From Guillardia theta CCMP2712 (Eukaryota > Protista > Cryptophyta), in assembly GCF_000315625.1 (NCBI RefSeq), contig NW_005434649.1, forward strand, positions 62,001 through 126,000: a DNA stretch of 64,000 bases, given 5' to 3'. A model generated the notes under the pieces. That model had not been told where the DNA came from and did no database searches. It saw nothing but the letters and a program-made list of their open reading frames with translations. The translations under genes were made by a program, and so were the position numbers. This document shows, one piece after another, positions 22,181-27,683 of this stretch. Positions within the stretch are counted from its first letter, which is position 1. Each line of letters begins with the position of its first letter.

Positions 22181-25100
22181 CTACACGATGAAAGATTGAT
22201 GAGATTTATTGAGACTTCTTTTGAAAGAAATTCTTGATCGATTGGTTCTTCGAGGCTGGTTTTGTGTCTGATGATACCTTCTTGTTCTGATATGAAGTGA
22301 TTCGGCGAGATGACAAAGGAATACACACAAACGACATACCTGTGACCTCTTTTGATGAAAGATTTGCATGACATTGCCCTTCCTGTCAATGCGGAACTCT
22401 TCTCTAGTGAACACCTGCACAAGAAAGAATGATCTAGATTCGACTCGATGCCCCTCATATATCACCTTTGTCTTCTCTCCCGTTGGCAGATTGATCAGGT
22501 CGTATCTGTTTACATGCTTTACACGCTGCGAATGAGTGTCCTGATGTCACCCCCGCTCATCGTTGTATGCTTGATTCTTCCTCCTCATCTCCAACATCGC
22601 CCTGCGTGTCTGTCACTGGACGCCATGCCGGCATGCAACTTCACGTGACTGTCTCGGCCCTTGCTCCGCGAAGGTCAGTGATGACGCGATGAGGGTAGGT
22701 CTCTCCGAGCTTCACTCCTGCTGCCGACAAGTCCTGCGAGGGAACGAGAAGTGAGGGAGTGAGTGGTGAGGAGAGGAAGAGGAGAGGAGAGGAGTAGGAG
22801 AGGGAGGGATGGGGAGGGGAGGGGAGAAGATGGAGGGTTAGGGGAGGTGTGGAGAGGGAGGGAGAGGAGAGGAGAGGAGAAGAAGAGGGAGAGGAGGCAT
22901 ACGAATGTTGAGACAGTGACTGAGGAAGAGCATTAAGGGGTTGAAGCAGAAGATGCAAGGAAAGCCAGGAAAGTCCTCTCACTTTTTCGCTGGCTGTCCA
23001 TGGTGCATGAATGTGTTTGTTGCTGAGCTGAGCAAGCTCTGGTACCCACCTGTGCGAGATCAAAAACAGACAGGGAACGAGGGGAGAGGATGAGAAGGAG
23101 AGGAAGAGAGGAGAGGGGAAGAGGAGAGGTCGAAGGAGAGGGGAAGGGAGAGGGAGAGGGAGAGGGAGAGGGAGAGGGAGAGGGAGAGGGAGAGGGAGAG
23201 GGAGAGGGAGAGGGAAGAGAGGAAGAGAGAACGGGCAGGAAAGGAGCAAAGTAAAATCTAAGATAAAGGATCTACCTTCGCACGTATGCTCCTGTTGGGT
23301 CTTGCGATCCATTTTCTGGGCTCATAATGAAGTTCCACTGTACCTGATGTGTCAAAACAAGCGCTCCTCACCCTCCCCTTCCCCCATCCAGCAACCCAAA
23401 CTCTCTCTCTCCTCCCCGTTACCCCTGACCTCCTCTCCTCTGCACTGCCACCATCCTTCCACCAGACTGCTCGCTCTCTGTGTTTCTCCCTCCTCTGCTT
23501 CTACTCGCCTGATCGATTCCTGACCGCCCAGCGTTTTGCCACATCATCGCGTTGATGGCATGATCAAGATCCACCAACGTCTCATGGAACCATTCCAAGC
23601 CCTTGACCCAGCTGATACACAAGTACTGAAAGGCTGGTATTAGACCGCACTGTTCCCTTCCATTCACCGTCCATCGGGCTCCCTCCTCCATGTTTTCACA
23701 CACTCTCCCCTCCTTGCGTTCTCCTCTTCTCCTATTCTTTCCAGCTCCCTCCTCCTCTTTTCGCTTCTTCACGCACTCTCATGTTTTCATCCCTCAGTAT
23801 CGAAAGCCTTTGTCCTCCTCCTCCGCTCATCCCCGTTCCTCTCCTCTATCGTCGTTCTTTAAACTCTCACCTCGCACAGAAACGACGCTGCGATCATGCG
23901 CACGTTCTGGTGCATCCATCCTGTTGCATACAGCTCTCTCATCCCCGCGTCCACCATCGGGAATCCCGTCCTCCCCTGCTTCCACGCTGACAGCAGCTCC
24001 TCGTCTTCCCGCCACCACTGTCACAACCGCATCGGTCGGTCAGCACTCGCCGAGGGAGAAGAGGAAGAGCGGAAGGAGCAAACGGAGCGGTGAAAGAGGA
24101 GGGTAAGAAGACAGTAGAACAAGTCCCAAGGACGCGGACTGTGAGACCGAGGGCTGACGGTTGAGAGAGGATGTTGCGGGAGAGATTGACAACATCAAGC
24201 ACCCGTACTAGTAGCAGTGCCAGTGCTGGGGGGCAAGGGAAGAGGAGGGGGGGGGGGGTTGAACAGGAGGGGGAGGAGGATTGCCTGATCTTTGTAGTGC
24301 TTGCGAATGGGGACATGCGACATGTCAGGAAAAGTGTGAAGATGGAAATATGCAAGATCTCTCCTGCAAAGACAGCATCAGCGAACAGAACAAGATAGAG
24401 GAGCACAAAGAAAGGAAGGAGGAAGAAGGGAGAAAGAAAAACAAAGACAGAGGGAAAGAGAGAGGACAACCAAGCAGAAAATGTGTGGGAGGGAAAGGAA
24501 AATCGAAGAAAGAAGTAGAATGATTCTTCAGACAGGAGACACGAGATGGAAGACAACGGACAATAGTGGGAAACAGATAAGGGGGGAGGAGGATGGAACT
24601 GAAGGAGTCTCATTACCAGAAGAGGCGACGTGAGAAAGTTTTGATCTTGTCCTGGCTCAAGCGGGTGTCTACGACGGCAAAATGCAAAGTCCTGGGTGAT
24701 AGGATTCCAAACCTGATGAGAACTTGATGTAAAAACTGAGAAGAGCGCCAAAAGTTCAAAAACACCGAATCGGATACAATCAACTACCTACTACTGGAGG
24801 ACTTATAAGAGCAGAACAAATGCTTCAGATCAACATACTCCCTCCCTCCCTCCCTCCCTCCCTCCCTCCCTCCCTCCCTCCCTCCCTCCCTCCCTTTCTC
24901 GGAGCCCTACTAGCCTTCACACCTCAGGTACGGAGAAAGTCTCGACACCACGGGAACATCCGCACGACTGCGAGAACTCTCGTATTTGATCAGCTTCGAC
25001 TTGATGAACTTGTTCATTTCCTCCTGCAATCATAAACTTCATTTCATTTCCCCCTCCTCCTCCCTTGAAACCTCCTCCTTGGCCGTTCTTCCGCTACTCC

Positions 25101-27683
25101 TCCCTCCTCCTCCTCTTCCACTTCTCCTCTGCTTCCTCCCCTTGCTCCTCCCTCACCATTGCTGCTTCCTCTCCGAACTTCCAGCTACTCTTCACTCCTG
25201 CTCCCCAGTCGATCATCCTTCCATCTCTGCCGACAGGCATCTTTGCCATCTCCAGCTCCTCCAGCCGCAGAGAGCAAGGAGCTTGTCTCGCTCGGGTGAG
25301 TGTCTTCGGCTGAGGAAGAGGACGACGGAGAGGAGGAAGCCGGCTACATGCGCGAAGGAAGGGTGTCAGAGTTCCCCAGTGTCCTCGACCGTCGTATCCA
25401 GGAGGAATGGCAATGTCCTCAGGACGGTACAGCAACGATGCGTCGAAGAGATGGACGGAGGACCCTTCAGCCTGTGAAGGATAAGATTTGATGAGGAGAT
25501 GGAGAATGACAGGGCAAGAAGCTATAGCAGAAAGAAAACATAGGCAGAAGAAAGTGCTTGCAAAGAGACGGAAGGCAAACACAATGAGACGAGAAAGGAA
25601 AGATGACAAGTTAAGGGCCAGGAAAGAGGAGAAAGACAAAAATTGAACGATGAAGAAAGGAAAAAAGTAGCAAGAAGAGAAAGCAAGGAGAAGAGGAAAA
25701 CGAAAGAAAAGAGAATACAAGAGAGAGAGGAGGGGCGGGAAACCTCGACAAGACACTTCATCTCCTCATCCTGATCCCTTAGCCAGGGCTCATAAAGTCT
25801 GTTTGCATACAGAGCAGTAGCTTGAGCTTCCTTCATGACATCCAGCACTTGTCGACAGTATGACTTCTCTTGTTCAGCCGCATCAGGTTTGCTCGAAACT
25901 TTTCTGAAGATGATATCGATCCCGTATTTGTCTGTCAAGGATTTCTGAAATACCTTCAACGATTCCTCCAACCACACCTTAGAAGGAGAACCGAATCAAA
26001 GCAAAATTGCATTGAAAACAAAAGGAATAAGAGGGTGTGAGATGACAAAGGAGGGGAAATGGAGGACAAAAGAAAAATGAGATAGAGAAAGGCACGAGAA
26101 GAACAATTCATGAGACAGAATGATAATCGTAGAAATCATGCACAAGGTTGTAACATACAGCTGCTGCAGATCTCTCCAGCGAATGTTCACTTCCGATTTC
26201 AGGGTCCCACACAAAGACAGGGAGGACGGGACGACAAAGGCTCGCCTGCGGTGCATGGAGGAGCAAATTCAAACATGATCAGGTCAAGCTTGATCGAAGA
26301 GCGATGATGACGTACCGCATGGAAGAGCGCTGGATTGTCTTCGAGCCGAAGGTCGTTGCGGAAGAGCACGACCACAGGTGACCCGTCGACTTGTGAGGTT
26401 TGAGACCTCTGCAGAGGAAACAAGGGCAGCAACAACAAAGGTTTCAGCGGGAAGGAAAGAAGAAGACACGGAAGGAAACACACCTCGGTCGTGGCTTGTA
26501 AGAACTTGTCCTTCTTTAGGGGACGCTCATCGTTGGATTGATCAAAGCTAACGCTCGTGTCTCGGAGCCCGTCTTCCTGCTCTTGACATTTCAACCGCTT
26601 CCCCAACGACACGACTCCGTCCCTTGCACTACATGCAGACAAAGTCATGTGCCTGAAACCATGCTTGTTACATTCACATACCTGTCATCTTCACCGCATT
26701 GCTCACTCTCAGCAGCATGAAACTTGTTGACTTGCACTGAGCCGACGAGCTGTTCTACTCGTCGGAAATCCTCCTCTTTCACGCATGCAGTCTCTATCAG
26801 AACTTCGACATCAAACTCTCGGTAGATCGTCACTATCTCCGTCACAACAGCATCCGCCTTGTCAACCTGTGCAAATAGATTCTCAGATACACACCAAGCC
26901 CACCCTCCCGCCAACCGAGTCCAGGAACGCCTCTGAGAGGAACACACCCTTCCATGGTCGGAATTTCATCTGACGGTAAGAACAAGTTCAATGACATGTC
27001 TTCAAATATCCGTGAAAGCAAGTCAACAAGCACCTGAGCGAGAAACTTCTTGCTGGGAACGAAGAGGGAACCGAAGATCTTGAAGGGGCTGGCGGTGGAG
27101 GAGGCAGACCTCACGGCCTGGAGGAATCGGAGACCTTCTCTCAGCAGCTCCATGTTGCTTCCAAACTGCAACCAGACGTGCGAGACGCATCCGGTTGCAA
27201 CCTTTTCCTTGAGCCTCTGCTGCTCTCTTTCTCTTTCCTTCACATCAGGGAAGTATGGGTTGAAAGCTACTCCTATCTCCGCATGCTTCTGCCTGCTGCC
27301 CGCAAGCTCCTTCAAACAGGTGATGGAGTCCAAGGACGATGAAACAACAGAGCCAGAGACCAACAGGAAGCTGCCCACCCCTGCTGGAGGGCTTGTCACG
27401 TCGTTAATGAAGGTTTTGTGCGTCTCCTGGGCTGTCCTGAGCTTGCGGTTCTTCACGCTCCAATGAAGGCAGATGTCGACGTTGGGAACATTCTCCCACA
27501 GAACTTGTGCGAAGTCGTTCAGAGTATCTTTGTTGGACTTGTTCGGCAGGTTTACCTGAATCATGTCATCCTCGCACACAGCCCTCTCCTGCTCTCCCTA
27601 ACCTTAGTGATGTTGTACTTCCTTAGGACGGGAACTAGTTTGACGAGCTCAGGGACGCTCTTGGCATGCAGCTCATAACGCAT
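22181..27683 (-). CDS. Plant-like cryptochrome/photolyase (CryP-type) with N-terminal MTHFR-like FAD-oxidoreductase domain, many exons (3' end approximate)
   Basis: Photolyase exons: VVLFRNDLRLEDNPALFHA, PVFVWDP, ANRLYEPW, GHWGTLTPF, SRLSPYLR, AWKQGRTGFPMVDAGMRELYATGWMHQNVRM, WFHETLVDLDHAINAMMWQNAGRSGIDQ|WNFIMSP, QDPTGAYVRRWVPEL, HIHAPW, LGETYPHRVI, and a tail GYDLINLPTGEKTKVFTREEFR. Upstream exons from ATG 27683: ITK|VNLPNK, ICLHWSVKN, FLLVSGS, IGVAFNPY, RLKEKV, VWLQFG, GSLFVPS, MKFRPWKGVFLS. Confidence 0.9.
23135..23222. repeat. (GAGAGG)n microsatellite, intronic
   Basis: Direct reading. Confidence 0.9.
24841..24894. repeat. (CCCT)n microsatellite, intronic
   Basis: Direct reading. Confidence 0.9.

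What the first reader, a model, noticed from the sequence alone, without database searches (positions are those of the whole stretch)
22181..27683. MTHFR-like flavoprotein domain fused in frame to a CryP-type cryptochrome/photolyase
Seen in sequence: one phase-consistent GT-AG splice path runs from ATG 27683 through an ~300-aa domain (VNLPNK, CLHWSVKN, FLLVSGS, IGVAFNPY, RLKEKV...VWLQFG, GSLFVPS). It continues via LAQ|MKFRPWKGVFLSEAFLDS|VDKAD...EDD|SARDG...TTE|RSQ directly into VVLFRNDLRLEDN, with no stop. Established: methylenetetrahydrofolate reductase catalytic barrels show the corresponding series (H..C, LAL.GD, IGVA.YP, L..KV..GA....TQ). Many photolyases/cryptochromes bind the folate 5,10-methenyl-THF as antenna. 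Inference: a two-flavin protein that could couple folate or NAD(P)H redox state to light sensing or repair, supply or modify its own antenna, or use the extra domain as a second antenna or dark reductant. I cannot tell whether this fusion has already been described.
Basis: partly seen in the sequence, partly recalled or inferred. Interest (0 to 1): 0.9.

Follow-up and report, generated by a model that had tools for sequence, protein, structure and literature searches.

The report
Cryptochrome fused to MTHFR-like barrel
This algal gene (Guillardia theta) joins a blue-light cryptochrome of the CryP type to a previously unannotated enzyme-like domain with the fold of the folate enzyme MTHFR; the same fusion occurs in many diatoms and a dinoflagellate, yet I found no paper that describes it.

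Summary
One 21-exon gene on the minus strand (CDS 27683..22206) encodes a 906-aa protein. Spliced RNA contigs from three studies join every exon. The model is identical to a Guillardia theta transcriptome protein (P0409).

Residues 1-262 form a (beta/alpha)8 barrel with no Pfam, NCBIfam or PDB sequence match. A high-confidence model of a 46%-identical homologue (pLDDT 95) matches MTHFRs first (Foldseek top 50; VIA Z 16-19). The Glu, Phe and Gln of the folate site are conserved; Asp120 is Ser.

An NLS-like linker follows, then a PCRY-like (CryP-type) photolyase-homology region carrying the diagnostic WRDLAY and MWQNxG motifs.

The fusion is common: 91 of 104 closest PCRY-like proteins carry the barrel, in diatoms, Breviolum and G. 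theta. Stand-alone barrels occur in green algae and Prochlorococcus. Both G. theta and Prochlorococcus also keep canonical MTHFR.

Flavin binding by the barrel is not shown. The best reading is a folate-binding, probably catalytic module coupled to the cryptochrome. Reviews up to 2025 do not mention it.

The parts
22206..27683 (-). Complete CDS of the fusion gene. It has 21 exons and encodes 906 aa from ATG 27683. Exons: 27683-27603, 27555-27034, 26969-26916, 26866-26682, 26628-26484, 26408-26316, 26245-26159, 25977-25744, 25471-25157, 25023-24923, 24712-24617, 24363-24285, 24017-23871, 23625-23509, 23337-23276, 23049-22983, 22733-22645, 22601-22551, 22505-22466, 22414-22340, 22286-22206.
   Evidence: Exon table and translation are. 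The product is identical to P0409 residues 76-981. Joints are seen in spliced contigs of runs X1-X3.
27684..27960 (-). 5' UTR as covered by the RNA contigs. It holds an in-frame upstream ATG at 27908 (75 extra residues in P0409). It also holds a one-codon uORF at 27918, a 6-codon uORF (ATG 27693) that overlaps the main ATG, and an alternatively spliced 5'-UTR intron at about 27929-27863.
   Evidence: The X1 contig reaches 27960. The X3 contig leaves 27862 and continues with 12 letters that match 27942-27931. Sequence read. The upstream extension equals P0409 residues 1-75.
26738..27683 (-). N-terminal (beta/alpha)8 barrel, aa 1-262 (exons 1-3 and most of exon 4). It belongs to the MTHFR / methylene-tetrahydropterin-reductase fold superfamily but matches no Pfam family.
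   Evidence: The A1 profile matches the window at E 8.6e-59. AF2 of homologue P0003:10-269 gave pLDDT 95.4 with 8 strand-helix units. The Foldseek top 50 are all MTHFR, E 1e-10, TM 0.69. VIA Z is 19.0-16.3 for six MTHFR-type entries and 15.2 or less for other barrels. Atlas fold search agrees. No Pfam, NCBIfam or PDB sequence hit.
27672..27674 (-). Codon of Glu4 in strand beta1 (RYELH). It aligns with the catalytic Glu28 of E. coli MTHFR.
   Evidence: hhalign global alignment. The VIA ranges put model residue 1 at chain residue 25 of 1zp3. Glu is present in 97% of 217 domains.
27166..27168 (-). Codon of Gln157 in strand beta6 (VWLQFG). It aligns with the pterin-binding Gln183 of E. coli MTHFR.
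   Evidence: Conserved in 96% of domains.
26916..26969 (-). Micro-exon 3 (MKFRPWKGVFLSEAFLDS), the most conserved motif of the family. Its Phe204 (26963-26961) aligns with Phe223 of E. coli MTHFR, which stacks on the folate.
   Evidence: Exon included in the X1, X2 and X3 contigs by length arithmetic. F/R/P/W/G are conserved at 90-99%. Alignment.
26376..26737 (-). Linker, aa 263-340. It is predicted to be disordered and carries basic NLS-like motifs (KRLK, PLKKDK). The range includes introns 4 and 5.
   Evidence: The linker is disordered in the full-length model of homologue P0102 (pLDDT below 50). A KRxK-type motif is found in 21 of 23 fused linkers and at the end of 37 of 52 stand-alone eukaryotic forms.
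25307..26375 (-). Photolyase alpha/beta (antenna-binding) domain, PF00875, aa 341-522. It starts at VVLFRNDLRLEDN.
   Evidence: Pfam on P0409: PF00875 at E 1.3e-29, residues 416-597. Exon-wise hits.
22595..24636 (-). FAD-binding helical domain of the photolyase/cryptochrome family, PF03441, aa 632-827.
   Evidence: Pfam on P0409: PF03441 at E 6.8e-64, residues 707-902. Best solved relatives are 4u63 (2.2e-72) and plant CRY1/CRY2.
23527..23544 (-). MWQNAG, the pl3 motif that is diagnostic of PCRY-like (CryP-type) cryptochromes.
   Evidence: Regex on P0409. Motif definition and specificity come from PMC9498864. Codons read.
24348..24363 (-). RDLAY of the pl2 motif WRDLAY. The Trp codon is split by intron 11 (TG at 24618-24617, G at 24363).
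   Evidence: Motif from PMC9498864.
22206..22594 (-). C-terminal extension, aa 828-906. It holds the conserved GYDLINLPTGEKTKVFTREEFRIDR hairpin and a Lys-rich tail, and ends at TAA 22208-22206 next to an AATAAA.
   Evidence: Identical to the P0409 C-terminus. The motif is conserved in all full-length homologues. A beta-hairpin is predicted in P0102.
24018..24284 (-). Intron 12, GC-AG.
   Evidence: Joint 24017/24285 with ends CT..GC on the + strand in X1-X3. Exon table.
23338..23508 (-). Intron 14, GC-AG.
   Evidence: Joint 23337/23509 with ends CT..GC in X1-X3. Exon table.

Best explanation
This is a single Guillardia theta gene for a modular photoreceptor.

Shown:
- A ~262-aa (beta/alpha)8 barrel of the MTHFR / methylene-tetrahydropterin-reductase superfamily is joined by a ~75-aa disordered linker with an NLS-like motif to a PCRY-like (CryP-type) cryptochrome with a ~80-aa C-terminal extension.
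- The barrel belongs to a distinct, so far unannotated family.
- That family also exists as a stand-alone protein in Prochlorococcus and green algae.
- It is fused to PCRY-like cryptochromes in diatoms, a dinoflagellate and this cryptophyte.

Inferred:
- The barrel keeps the catalytic Glu of strand beta1, the folate-stacking Phe and the pterin-binding Gln of strand beta6. It also keeps a conserved basic helix alpha5 where MTHFR holds the ADP part of its dinucleotide.
- It therefore most likely binds a reduced folate or pterin together with a dinucleotide (FAD or NAD(P)H) and carries out an MTHFR-like proton and hydride transfer.
- It is not the housekeeping MTHFR.

More speculative: in the fused protein this chemistry is coupled to the light-driven FAD of the cryptochrome. 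Either light gates the barrel's activity in the nucleus, or the barrel's ligand or redox state tunes cryptochrome signalling.
For: Architecture:
- Spliced contigs and identity to P0409.
- Pfam domains.
- PCRY-like motifs (with PMC9498864).
- Nearest solved relatives 4u63 and plant CRYs.

Fold:
- pLDDT 95.4 model.
- Foldseek top 50 all MTHFR.
- VIA Z 19.0, 18.9, 18.7, 18.0, 17.0 and 16.3 for MTHFR-type entries, against 15.2 or less for other barrels.
- Atlas TM 0.76-0.79 to PF02219 clusters.
- hhalign against a 7-sequence MTHFR profile: E 1.7e-4 local and 3.3e-5 global, probability 46-49%, in register over 196-234 columns.

Active site:
- E. coli E28, H88, D165, K172, Q183 and F223 align with window E4, H58, E138, K145, Q157 and F204.
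- Each is 90-100% conserved across 217 domains from fused, stand-alone and Prochlorococcus forms.
- Glu, Phe and Gln are positions A, B and C shared by MTHFR, Mfr and Mer (PMC11094777).

Recurrence of the fusion:
- 23 of 23 long proteins with the barrel carry photolyase Pfams.
- 91 of 104 closest PCRY-like proteins carry the barrel.
- Named taxa appear.

Not housekeeping: G. theta has two canonical MTHFR genes and Prochlorococcus has MetF.

Nuclear hint: a KRxK motif follows the barrel in 21 of 23 fused and 37 of 52 stand-alone forms.
Against: - No cofactor or activity was measured.
- Sequence-level homology to MTHFR is marginal (hhalign probability below 50%). No Pfam MTHFR or MTHFR_2 hit appears at E up to 10.
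- Asp120, essential in E. coli MTHFR, is Ser here. Arg118 and Thr59/Tyr60 are not conserved.
- The gap between MTHFR-type entries and generic TIM barrels in VIA is only about 1-4 Z units.
- The structural model is of a 46%-identical homologue, not of the window's own sequence.
- The full-length model of homologue P0102 gives pTM 0.65 with a disordered linker. There is therefore no evidence that the two domains dock.
- In Prochlorococcus the barrel is not near any photolyase. Its function does not need a cryptochrome.
Confidence: 0.6

Rival explanations
1. The barrel is a non-catalytic sensor or scaffold. It binds a folate, NAD(P)H or another metabolite, or mediates oligomerisation or partner binding. 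It only modulates cryptochrome signalling, much as C-terminal extensions do in other cryptochromes.
For: - Asp120 and Arg118 equivalents are lost.
- Cryptochromes generally signal through appended regions (PMC8591175).
- The linker is flexible and no fixed docking is predicted.
Against: - About 40 positions, mostly polar residues at the C-terminal ends of the strands, are 84-100% conserved from Prochlorococcus to diatoms. That pattern is typical of an active site.
- The barrel exists on its own in organisms without a PCRY-like partner nearby.
- The catalytic Glu is kept in 97% of members.
Confidence: 0.17
2. The barrel serves the antenna. It holds a second folate chromophore, or it makes, protects or loads the 5,10-methenyl-THF that CryP-type proteins use as antenna.
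For: - P. tricornutum CryP binds FAD and MTHF (PMC8591175).
- The barrel keeps the folate-site Glu, Phe and Gln.
- The related barrel 3ijd binds two 5-methyl-THF molecules.
Against: - MTHFR chemistry interconverts methylene- and methyl-THF, not methenyl-THF.
- Stand-alone barrels in Prochlorococcus and green algae are not linked to a photolyase gene.
- Most photolyases acquire MTHF without such a helper (established knowledge).
Confidence: 0.1
3. The barrel acts on something other than a folate, for example a deazaflavin or another pterin, a flavin-dependent oxygenation, or DNA. The resemblance to MTHFR would then reflect only shared ancestry of the fold.
For: - Luciferase-like, F420-dependent and Mer-type barrels follow closely in the fold ranking (Z 14-15).
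- Asp120 is not conserved.
- The eukaryotic forms carry an NLS-like motif and are fused to a photolyase homologue, which could suggest DNA-related work.
- The Prochlorococcus neighbour is an amine-oxidase-like flavoprotein, not a folate enzyme.
Against: - All six top VIA matches and all 50 top Foldseek matches are MTHFR-type.
- Glu, Phe and Gln align with the folate site.
- DNA-repair TIM barrels (endonuclease IV, UVDE) are not among the 50 best matches.
Confidence: 0.11
4. Artefact: two neighbouring genes wrongly merged, or a chimeric transcript assembly.
For: - RNA evidence comes from assembled contigs. The one raw-read RNA run laid (X15) gave only 15 reads, nearly all at the 3' end.
- Some extra contigs share short parts of the gene and then diverge.
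Against: - The same joints occur in three runs of three studies.
- An independent transcriptome protein is identical over 906 residues.
- The same architecture is found in more than 90 proteins from many taxa, including genome annotations.
- There is no stop or start signal between the domains.
Confidence: 0.02

Closest known systems
PCRY-like / plant-like cryptochrome CryP of Phaeodactylum tricornutum (Juhas et al. 2014, as summarised in PMC8591175 and PMC9498864)
   Same: - Same subfamily: PF00875 plus PF03441.
- The diagnostic motifs WRDLAY and MWQNxG are present.
- Asn stands at the position of E. coli photolyase Asn378 (numbering from memory).
- The C-terminal extension is short, about 80 aa.
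- The nearest solved relatives are class III CPD photolyase and plant CRYs.
   Different: - CryP is described as a photolyase-homology region plus a ~70-aa C-terminal extension, with no N-terminal domain. This protein carries a 262-aa folded barrel and an NLS-like linker in front.
- The pl1 motif VGLR is absent.
- Chromophore content and function are untested here.
FAD-dependent methylenetetrahydrofolate reductase (MetF/MTHFR, PF02219; 1b5t, 1zp3, 3apt, 6fnu)
   Same: - Best structural match, with the same strand order and barrel.
- Glu28, His88, Asp165 (as Glu), Lys172, Gln183 and Phe223 equivalents are conserved.
   Different: - No Pfam hit, and 13-18% identity in the structural alignments.
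- Asp120 and Arg118 are Ser, and Thr59/Tyr60 are Pro/Asn.
- FAD binding is not shown.
- Genomes that have the barrel also keep canonical MTHFR, so the role must differ.
FAD-independent Mfr of mycobacteria (PF19345; 8bgr) and F420-dependent Mer
   Same: - Same superfamily and similar fold score (Z 17.0 for 8bgr, 14.1 for Mer 1f07).
- They share the Glu and Gln positions.
- In Mfr the acidic position D is not strictly conserved either (PMC11094777).
- They show that this barrel can work without a bound flavin.
   Different: - No PF19345 hit.
- The conserved motifs differ: NLPNK, HYSxK, VSGSG, FNPY, KFRPWNG.
- The distribution is eukaryotic algae plus Prochlorococcus.
- The hydride donor is unknown.
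Photoreceptor-domain fusions in algae such as dualchrome (phytochrome plus plant CRY) and enzyme rhodopsins
   Same: A light-sensing module is joined to a second functional module by gene fusion (PMC8591175; PMC12558739).
   Different: - The partner here is a metabolic-enzyme fold at the N-terminus of a cryptochrome.
- It is widespread, whereas dualchrome is reported from a single alga.

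Membership tests
PCRY-like (CryP-type) cryptochromes | Photolyase-homology region: PF00875 alpha/beta domain plus PF03441 FAD-binding domain | tested here: met
   In P0409 (the window's product), PF00875 scores 1.3e-29 and PF03441 scores 6.8e-64.
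PCRY-like (CryP-type) cryptochromes | pl3 motif MWQNxG, present in 97% of members and in none of 2144 other CRY/PL sequences (PMC9498864) | tested here: met
   MWQNAG at P0409 residues 816-821, window 23544-23527. Motif definition.
PCRY-like (CryP-type) cryptochromes | pl2 motif WRDLAY (83% of members) | tested here: met
   WRDLAY at P0409 residues 713-718.
PCRY-like (CryP-type) cryptochromes | pl1 motif VGLR (74% of members) | tested here: not met
The motif is not universal in the family.
PCRY-like (CryP-type) cryptochromes | Binds FAD (neutral radical as isolated) and MTHF, with photoreceptor function | not testable with these tools
   Needs purified protein. Known only for P. tricornutum CryP.
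MTHFR (PF02219, FAD-dependent) | Sequence match to the family model above its gathering score | tested here: not met
   No hit at E up to 10 for exon 2, for P0409:76-345 or for any of 64 family members. The profile finds no MTHFR in the PDB.
MTHFR (PF02219, FAD-dependent) | (beta/alpha)8 barrel closest in structure to MTHFR | tested here: met
   Foldseek top 50 all MTHFR. VIA Z 19.0-16.3. Atlas search agrees. The model is of homologue P0003, which is 46% identical.
MTHFR (PF02219, FAD-dependent) | Catalytic Glu28, folate-binding Gln183 and Phe223 | tested here: met
   They align with E4, Q157 and F204, conserved at 97%, 96% and 90%.
MTHFR (PF02219, FAD-dependent) | Asp120, which binds the pterin and tunes the flavin | tested here: not met
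   It aligns with Ser96 in the motif VSGS. Arg118 aligns with Ser94.
MTHFR (PF02219, FAD-dependent) | Tightly bound FAD and NAD(P)H:methylene-THF reductase activity | not testable with these tools
   Only partial conservation of residues that I recall as FAD contacts (H88, D165, K172 kept; T59, Y60, R118 not). This is a lead from memory, not a test.
Mfr (PF19345, FAD-independent MTHFR) | Sequence match to the family model | tested here: not met
   No PF19345 hit. There is only a language-model lead at 0.84-0.88 and fold Z 17.0 to 8bgr.

The most novel reading that the evidence does not exclude
The fused protein is a light-coupled folate or pterin oxidoreductase that works in the nucleus. The photoreducible FAD of the CryP-type module gates or feeds the MTHFR-like barrel, or the barrel gates the FAD module. 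Blue or UV-A light would then directly set a one-carbon step, for example the supply of methyl-THF for methylation, in diatoms, dinoflagellates and cryptophytes. This would be the first cryptochrome with an enzymatic effector domain. The stand-alone barrels of Prochlorococcus and green algae would define a new enzyme family of the MTHFR superfamily.
Probability: 0.2. Interest if true: 0.85.

Novelty: new variant of a known kind. Interest (0 to 1): 0.68.

Why it matters
CryP-type cryptochromes are among the least understood photoreceptors of marine phytoplankton. Their model member is described as a bare photolyase-homology region with a short tail.

Here, 91 of the 104 closest relatives retrieved in diatoms, a dinoflagellate and a cryptophyte carry a conserved enzyme-like N-terminal barrel with a folate-type active site. 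Databases label these proteins only as 'photolyase'.

This gives a concrete, testable handle on the output or input of this cryptochrome class. It links light sensing to one-carbon or redox chemistry. It suggests nuclear action through the conserved NLS-like motif. It also defines a new protein family without a Pfam model, present in Prochlorococcus, one of the most abundant phototrophs.

It also raises the question whether the published P. tricornutum CryP model lacks this domain truly or only by annotation.

Tried and rejected
- Pfam and NCBIfam scans of the barrel (exon 2, P0409:76-345, 64 members) gave no family.
- Sequence searches of the PDB with the profile and with the window's own barrel found nothing relevant.
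- Complex prediction (barrel against photolyase region of homologue P0102, alignments A2 and A3) was not folded. The tool's eukaryote/microbe rule blocked it, so there is no verdict.
- The full-length AF2 model of P0102 gave pTM 0.65 with a disordered linker. This is uninformative on domain docking.
- Idea that the barrel replaces a missing MTHFR: rejected. G. theta has two canonical MTHFR genes and four Prochlorococcus genomes have MetF.
- Idea that the stand-alone barrel sits next to a photolyase in Prochlorococcus: rejected. There is none within 5 kb in 80 loci, and the CPF genes lie elsewhere.
- The Prochlorococcus neighbour, a 387-aa PF13450 protein, has no detectable homologue in G. theta with that query.
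- DNA-repair TIM barrel (endonuclease IV or UVDE type): considered because of the NLS and the photolyase partner. Not supported by the fold ranking; there were only two weak AP_endonuc_2 hits (E 0.039) among 64 members.
- Literature searches for the fusion found no description. One paper only notes that plant-like CRYs have 'N- or C-terminal extensions' (PMC9016551).
- The tree of 160 barrels (FastTree, midpoint root) could not count fusion events, because many 'short' rows are truncated gene calls.

Full report
**1. The observation**

The minus strand between 27.7 and 22.2 kb carries a long chain of short exons with canonical splice sites. I rebuilt the path by hand and by script. It has 21 coding exons and 20 introns between them, 18 GT-AG and two GC-AG (24284-24018 and 23508-23338). 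There is no stop codon from ATG 27683 to TAA 22208-22206, giving 906 codons.

The path is more than a paper construct. Contigs of three public runs from three studies lack the introns and show the joints. In run X1 one 2891-nt contig covers about 22366 to 27960. Its stretch between the pieces laid on 25743-25975 and 27034-27553 is 566 nt. That is exactly the last 2 nt of exon 8 plus exons 7, 6, 5, 4 and 3. In X2 the 58 nt between 26862 and 27034 equal the last 4 nt of exon 4 plus exon 3.

The translated model is also letter-for-letter identical to residues 76-981 of P0409. That protein is listed as 'Photolyase/cryptochrome alpha/beta domain-containing protein' of Guillardia theta, from UniRef and MMETSP. 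This identifies the organism. The assembly size (87.1 Mb in 669 contigs) fits what I remember of the G. theta genome.

A further intron (22339-22287) leads to the real last exon, 22286-22206.
- Two donors are GC, not GT.
- The transcript contains an in-frame ATG at 27908 that would add 75 hydrophobic, low-complexity residues, as in P0409. It lies in a 5'-UTR intron that X3 splices out and X1 and X2 retain. Homologues start at the equivalent of ATG 27683 (M-R-x-E-L-F), so 27683 is the likely main start.

**2. The C-terminal part**

Pfam finds PF00875 (1.3e-29) and PF03441 (6.8e-64) in P0409. The best solved relatives are the class III CPD photolyase of Agrobacterium (4u63, 2.2e-72) and plant CRY1/CRY2 (1e-68 to 1e-59).

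Deppisch et al. 2022 (PMC9498864) define PCRY-like (CryP-type) cryptochromes by three motifs. MWQNxG occurs in 97% of members and in no other subfamily. WRDLAY occurs in 83% and VGLR in 74%. The window's protein has MWQNAG and WRDLAY but not VGLR. Filing it as PCRY-like is therefore justified. Chromophores and function are untested.

About 80 residues follow PF03441, including a conserved GYDLI-LP-G-T-VFT-EY/F-R hairpin.

**3. The N-terminal part**

Exon 2 (174 aa) and the whole domain hit nothing in Pfam or NCBIfam at E up to 10. A profile of 64 members hits nothing relevant in the PDB by sequence.

It is nevertheless a real, large family:
- phmmer of exon 2 against 1.84 billion representatives gave 358 hits at E below 1e-3.
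- A profile search gave 481 proteins at E below 1e-5.

AlphaFold2 on the closest full-length domain with this alignment (P0003:10-269, 46% identical) gave pLDDT 95.4, pTM 0.92 and eight strand-helix units. Fold searches then gave:
- Foldseek against the PDB: MTHFR in all 50 top places (E about 1e-10, TM 0.69).
- The independent VIA search: Thermus, E. coli and yeast MTHFR at Z 19.0, 18.9 and 18.7. The 5-methyl-THF-binding Cthe_2304 scored 18.0, the FAD-independent Mfr of M. hassiacum 17.0 and Sphingobium MTHFR 16.3. Other TIM barrels scored 15.2 or less.
- The ESM Atlas search: the family's own unnamed clusters first, then PF02219 clusters at TM 0.76-0.79.

A profile-profile alignment against seven MTHFRs (E. 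coli, two from G. theta, four from Prochlorococcus) is marginal in score (probability 46-49%, E 1.7e-4 local and 3.3e-5 global). It is in register over all strands.

The alignment maps E. coli residues onto window residues as follows:

| E. coli MTHFR | Window protein |
|---|---|
| Glu28 | Glu4 |
| His88 | His58 |
| Arg118-Gly119-Asp120 | Ser94-Gly95-Ser96 |
| Asp165 | Glu138 |
| Lys172 | Lys145 |
| Gln183 | Gln157 |
| Phe223 | Phe204 |

Across 217 domains (27 fused, 120 short, 70 Prochlorococcus-like) these residues are 90-100% conserved. About 30 other positions, mostly at the C-terminal strand ends, are conserved too.

Glu, Phe and Gln are the positions A, B and C that MTHFR, Mfr and Mer share in their C1-carrier site. 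Position D (Asp120) is variable in Mfr as well (PMC11094777).

The fold assignment is therefore well supported, and a folate or pterin site is plausible. Membership of PF02219 or PF19345 is not met. Flavin binding is open: Mfr shows that this barrel can use NADH directly.

**4. Recurrence and distribution**

- All nine long hits that I scanned with photolyase Pfams have the barrel in front.
- 23 of 23 long proteins found through the barrel carry PF00875, and 21 of them also PF03441.
- Conversely, of the 104 closest PCRY-like proteins found through the photolyase part, 91 carry the barrel, 79 of them in full.
- One apparent exception (P0340) has the barrel ORF directly upstream on its contig. 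Another (P0410) has none within 5 kb.
- Named carriers are Odontella aurita, Thalassiosira exigua, Cylindrotheca closterium, Nitzschia inconspicua, Pseudo-nitzschia multistriata, Seminavis robusta, Amphora coffeaeformis, Breviolum minutum and G. theta.
- Stand-alone barrels exist. One is a 1.4-kb transcript-like contig with a stop and 3' UTR. Others are annotated proteins of the green algae Myrmecia bisecta and Sanguina. A 265-272-aa protein occurs in Prochlorococcus, and all 80 best loci of 162 in the species-genome collection are Prochlorococcus.
- G. theta has a single barrel copy, at least four CPF genes and two canonical MTHFR genes.
- Prochlorococcus also keeps MetF and ordinary photolyases elsewhere in the genome.
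- In a FastTree of 160 barrels the fused forms fall in at least four separate clades, and the Prochlorococcus forms make one clade. Truncated gene calls prevent counting fusion events.

**5. Other anatomy**

After the barrel nearly all eukaryotic forms carry a KRxK/KRRK-type basic motif. It is found in 21 of 23 fused linkers and in the last 20 residues of 37 of 52 stand-alone tails. The window has KRLK and PLKKDK. This looks like a nuclear localisation signal, which is an inference.

The full-length model of homologue P0102 has a disordered linker and pTM 0.65. It gives no evidence of a fixed domain arrangement.

**6. How it most likely works**

Shown: a two-module protein on one mRNA, an MTHFR-superfamily fold, a conserved active-site-like constellation, a PCRY-like photolyase-homology region, and independence from housekeeping MTHFR.

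Inferred:
- The barrel binds a reduced folate or pterin and a dinucleotide and performs MTHFR-like chemistry (about 0.6).
- In the fused protein this chemistry is coupled to the cryptochrome's light-driven FAD, probably in the nucleus (about 0.2-0.25 for a true light-gated enzyme).

Rivals are a non-catalytic sensor or scaffold, an antenna-related role, a non-folate substrate, and an artefact (very unlikely).

**7. Novelty**

The sequences are in public databases, labelled only as photolyase. Reviews of algal cryptochromes from 2021 and 2025 list five classes and describe CryP without an N-terminal domain. A family-wide motif study does not mention the domain. One paper notes unspecified 'N- or C-terminal extensions' in plant-like CRYs. 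No paper combining MTHFR-like with photolyase was found.

Within the searchable literature, the identity and conservation of this domain appear undescribed. Subscription-only papers could not be searched. I rate it a new variant of a known kind.

Noticed in passing
window 27863-27929 and 27908 (minus strand): An alternatively spliced 5'-UTR intron contains an in-frame upstream ATG (27908). When the intron is retained (runs X1, X2) the ORF gains 75 hydrophobic, low-complexity residues, as in the database protein P0409. When it is spliced out (X3) the first long ORF starts at 27683. There is also a 6-codon uORF (ATG 27693) that overlaps the main ATG.
   Followed up: partly
window 27654, 25103-25123, 24043, 24181, 23563: In all three RNA-contig runs, extra contigs share short stretches of the gene at 95% or more and then run on into unlike sequence. 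Depth at 27616-27812 is about twice that of the main contig. The 27600-27960 stretch is single-copy in the genome. These may be assembly-graph artefacts, isoforms or plus-strand transcripts. Not resolved.
   Followed up: partly
window 24829-24903, 23082-23222, 22763-22890 (introns): The introns hold long purine/pyrimidine microsatellites, (GGGA)n and (CTCTCC)n-like on the coding strand. The reads tool skipped them as repeats.
   Followed up: no
L010:8001-9987, L011:8001-9996, and 69 of 80 Prochlorococcus loci L013-L092: In Prochlorococcus the stand-alone barrel gene is followed after 13-25 bp, on the same strand, by a 387-aa PF13450 (NAD_binding_8), amine-oxidase-like flavoprotein gene of unknown function. 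This may be an operon pairing the barrel with a separate flavoprotein. The genomes are close kin, so the conserved adjacency is weak evidence.
   Followed up: partly
G000:C69:226474-227337 and G000:C7:845365-846179: G. theta has two canonical MTHFR (PF02219) genes in addition to the barrel of this finding.
   Followed up: partly
L106:145-1371 and 1364-3103: On a metagenome contig, a PCRY-like gene called as 579 aa without a barrel is directly preceded by a complete barrel ORF in another frame. 'Barrel-less' entries in databases can therefore be gene-calling artefacts. The same may apply to the published P. tricornutum CryP model.
   Followed up: partly
L105:1418-2448: A PCRY-like gene without a barrel within 5 kb has ORF pieces with weak DAO (FAD-dependent oxidoreductase) hits upstream on the same strand.
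   Followed up: no
window 18466-21565 (minus strand): The next gene downstream on the same strand is a TPR-rich ORF, noted by the first stage as an OGT-type GT41 glycosyltransferase. It starts about 650 bp after the stop codon of the cryptochrome gene.
   Followed up: no
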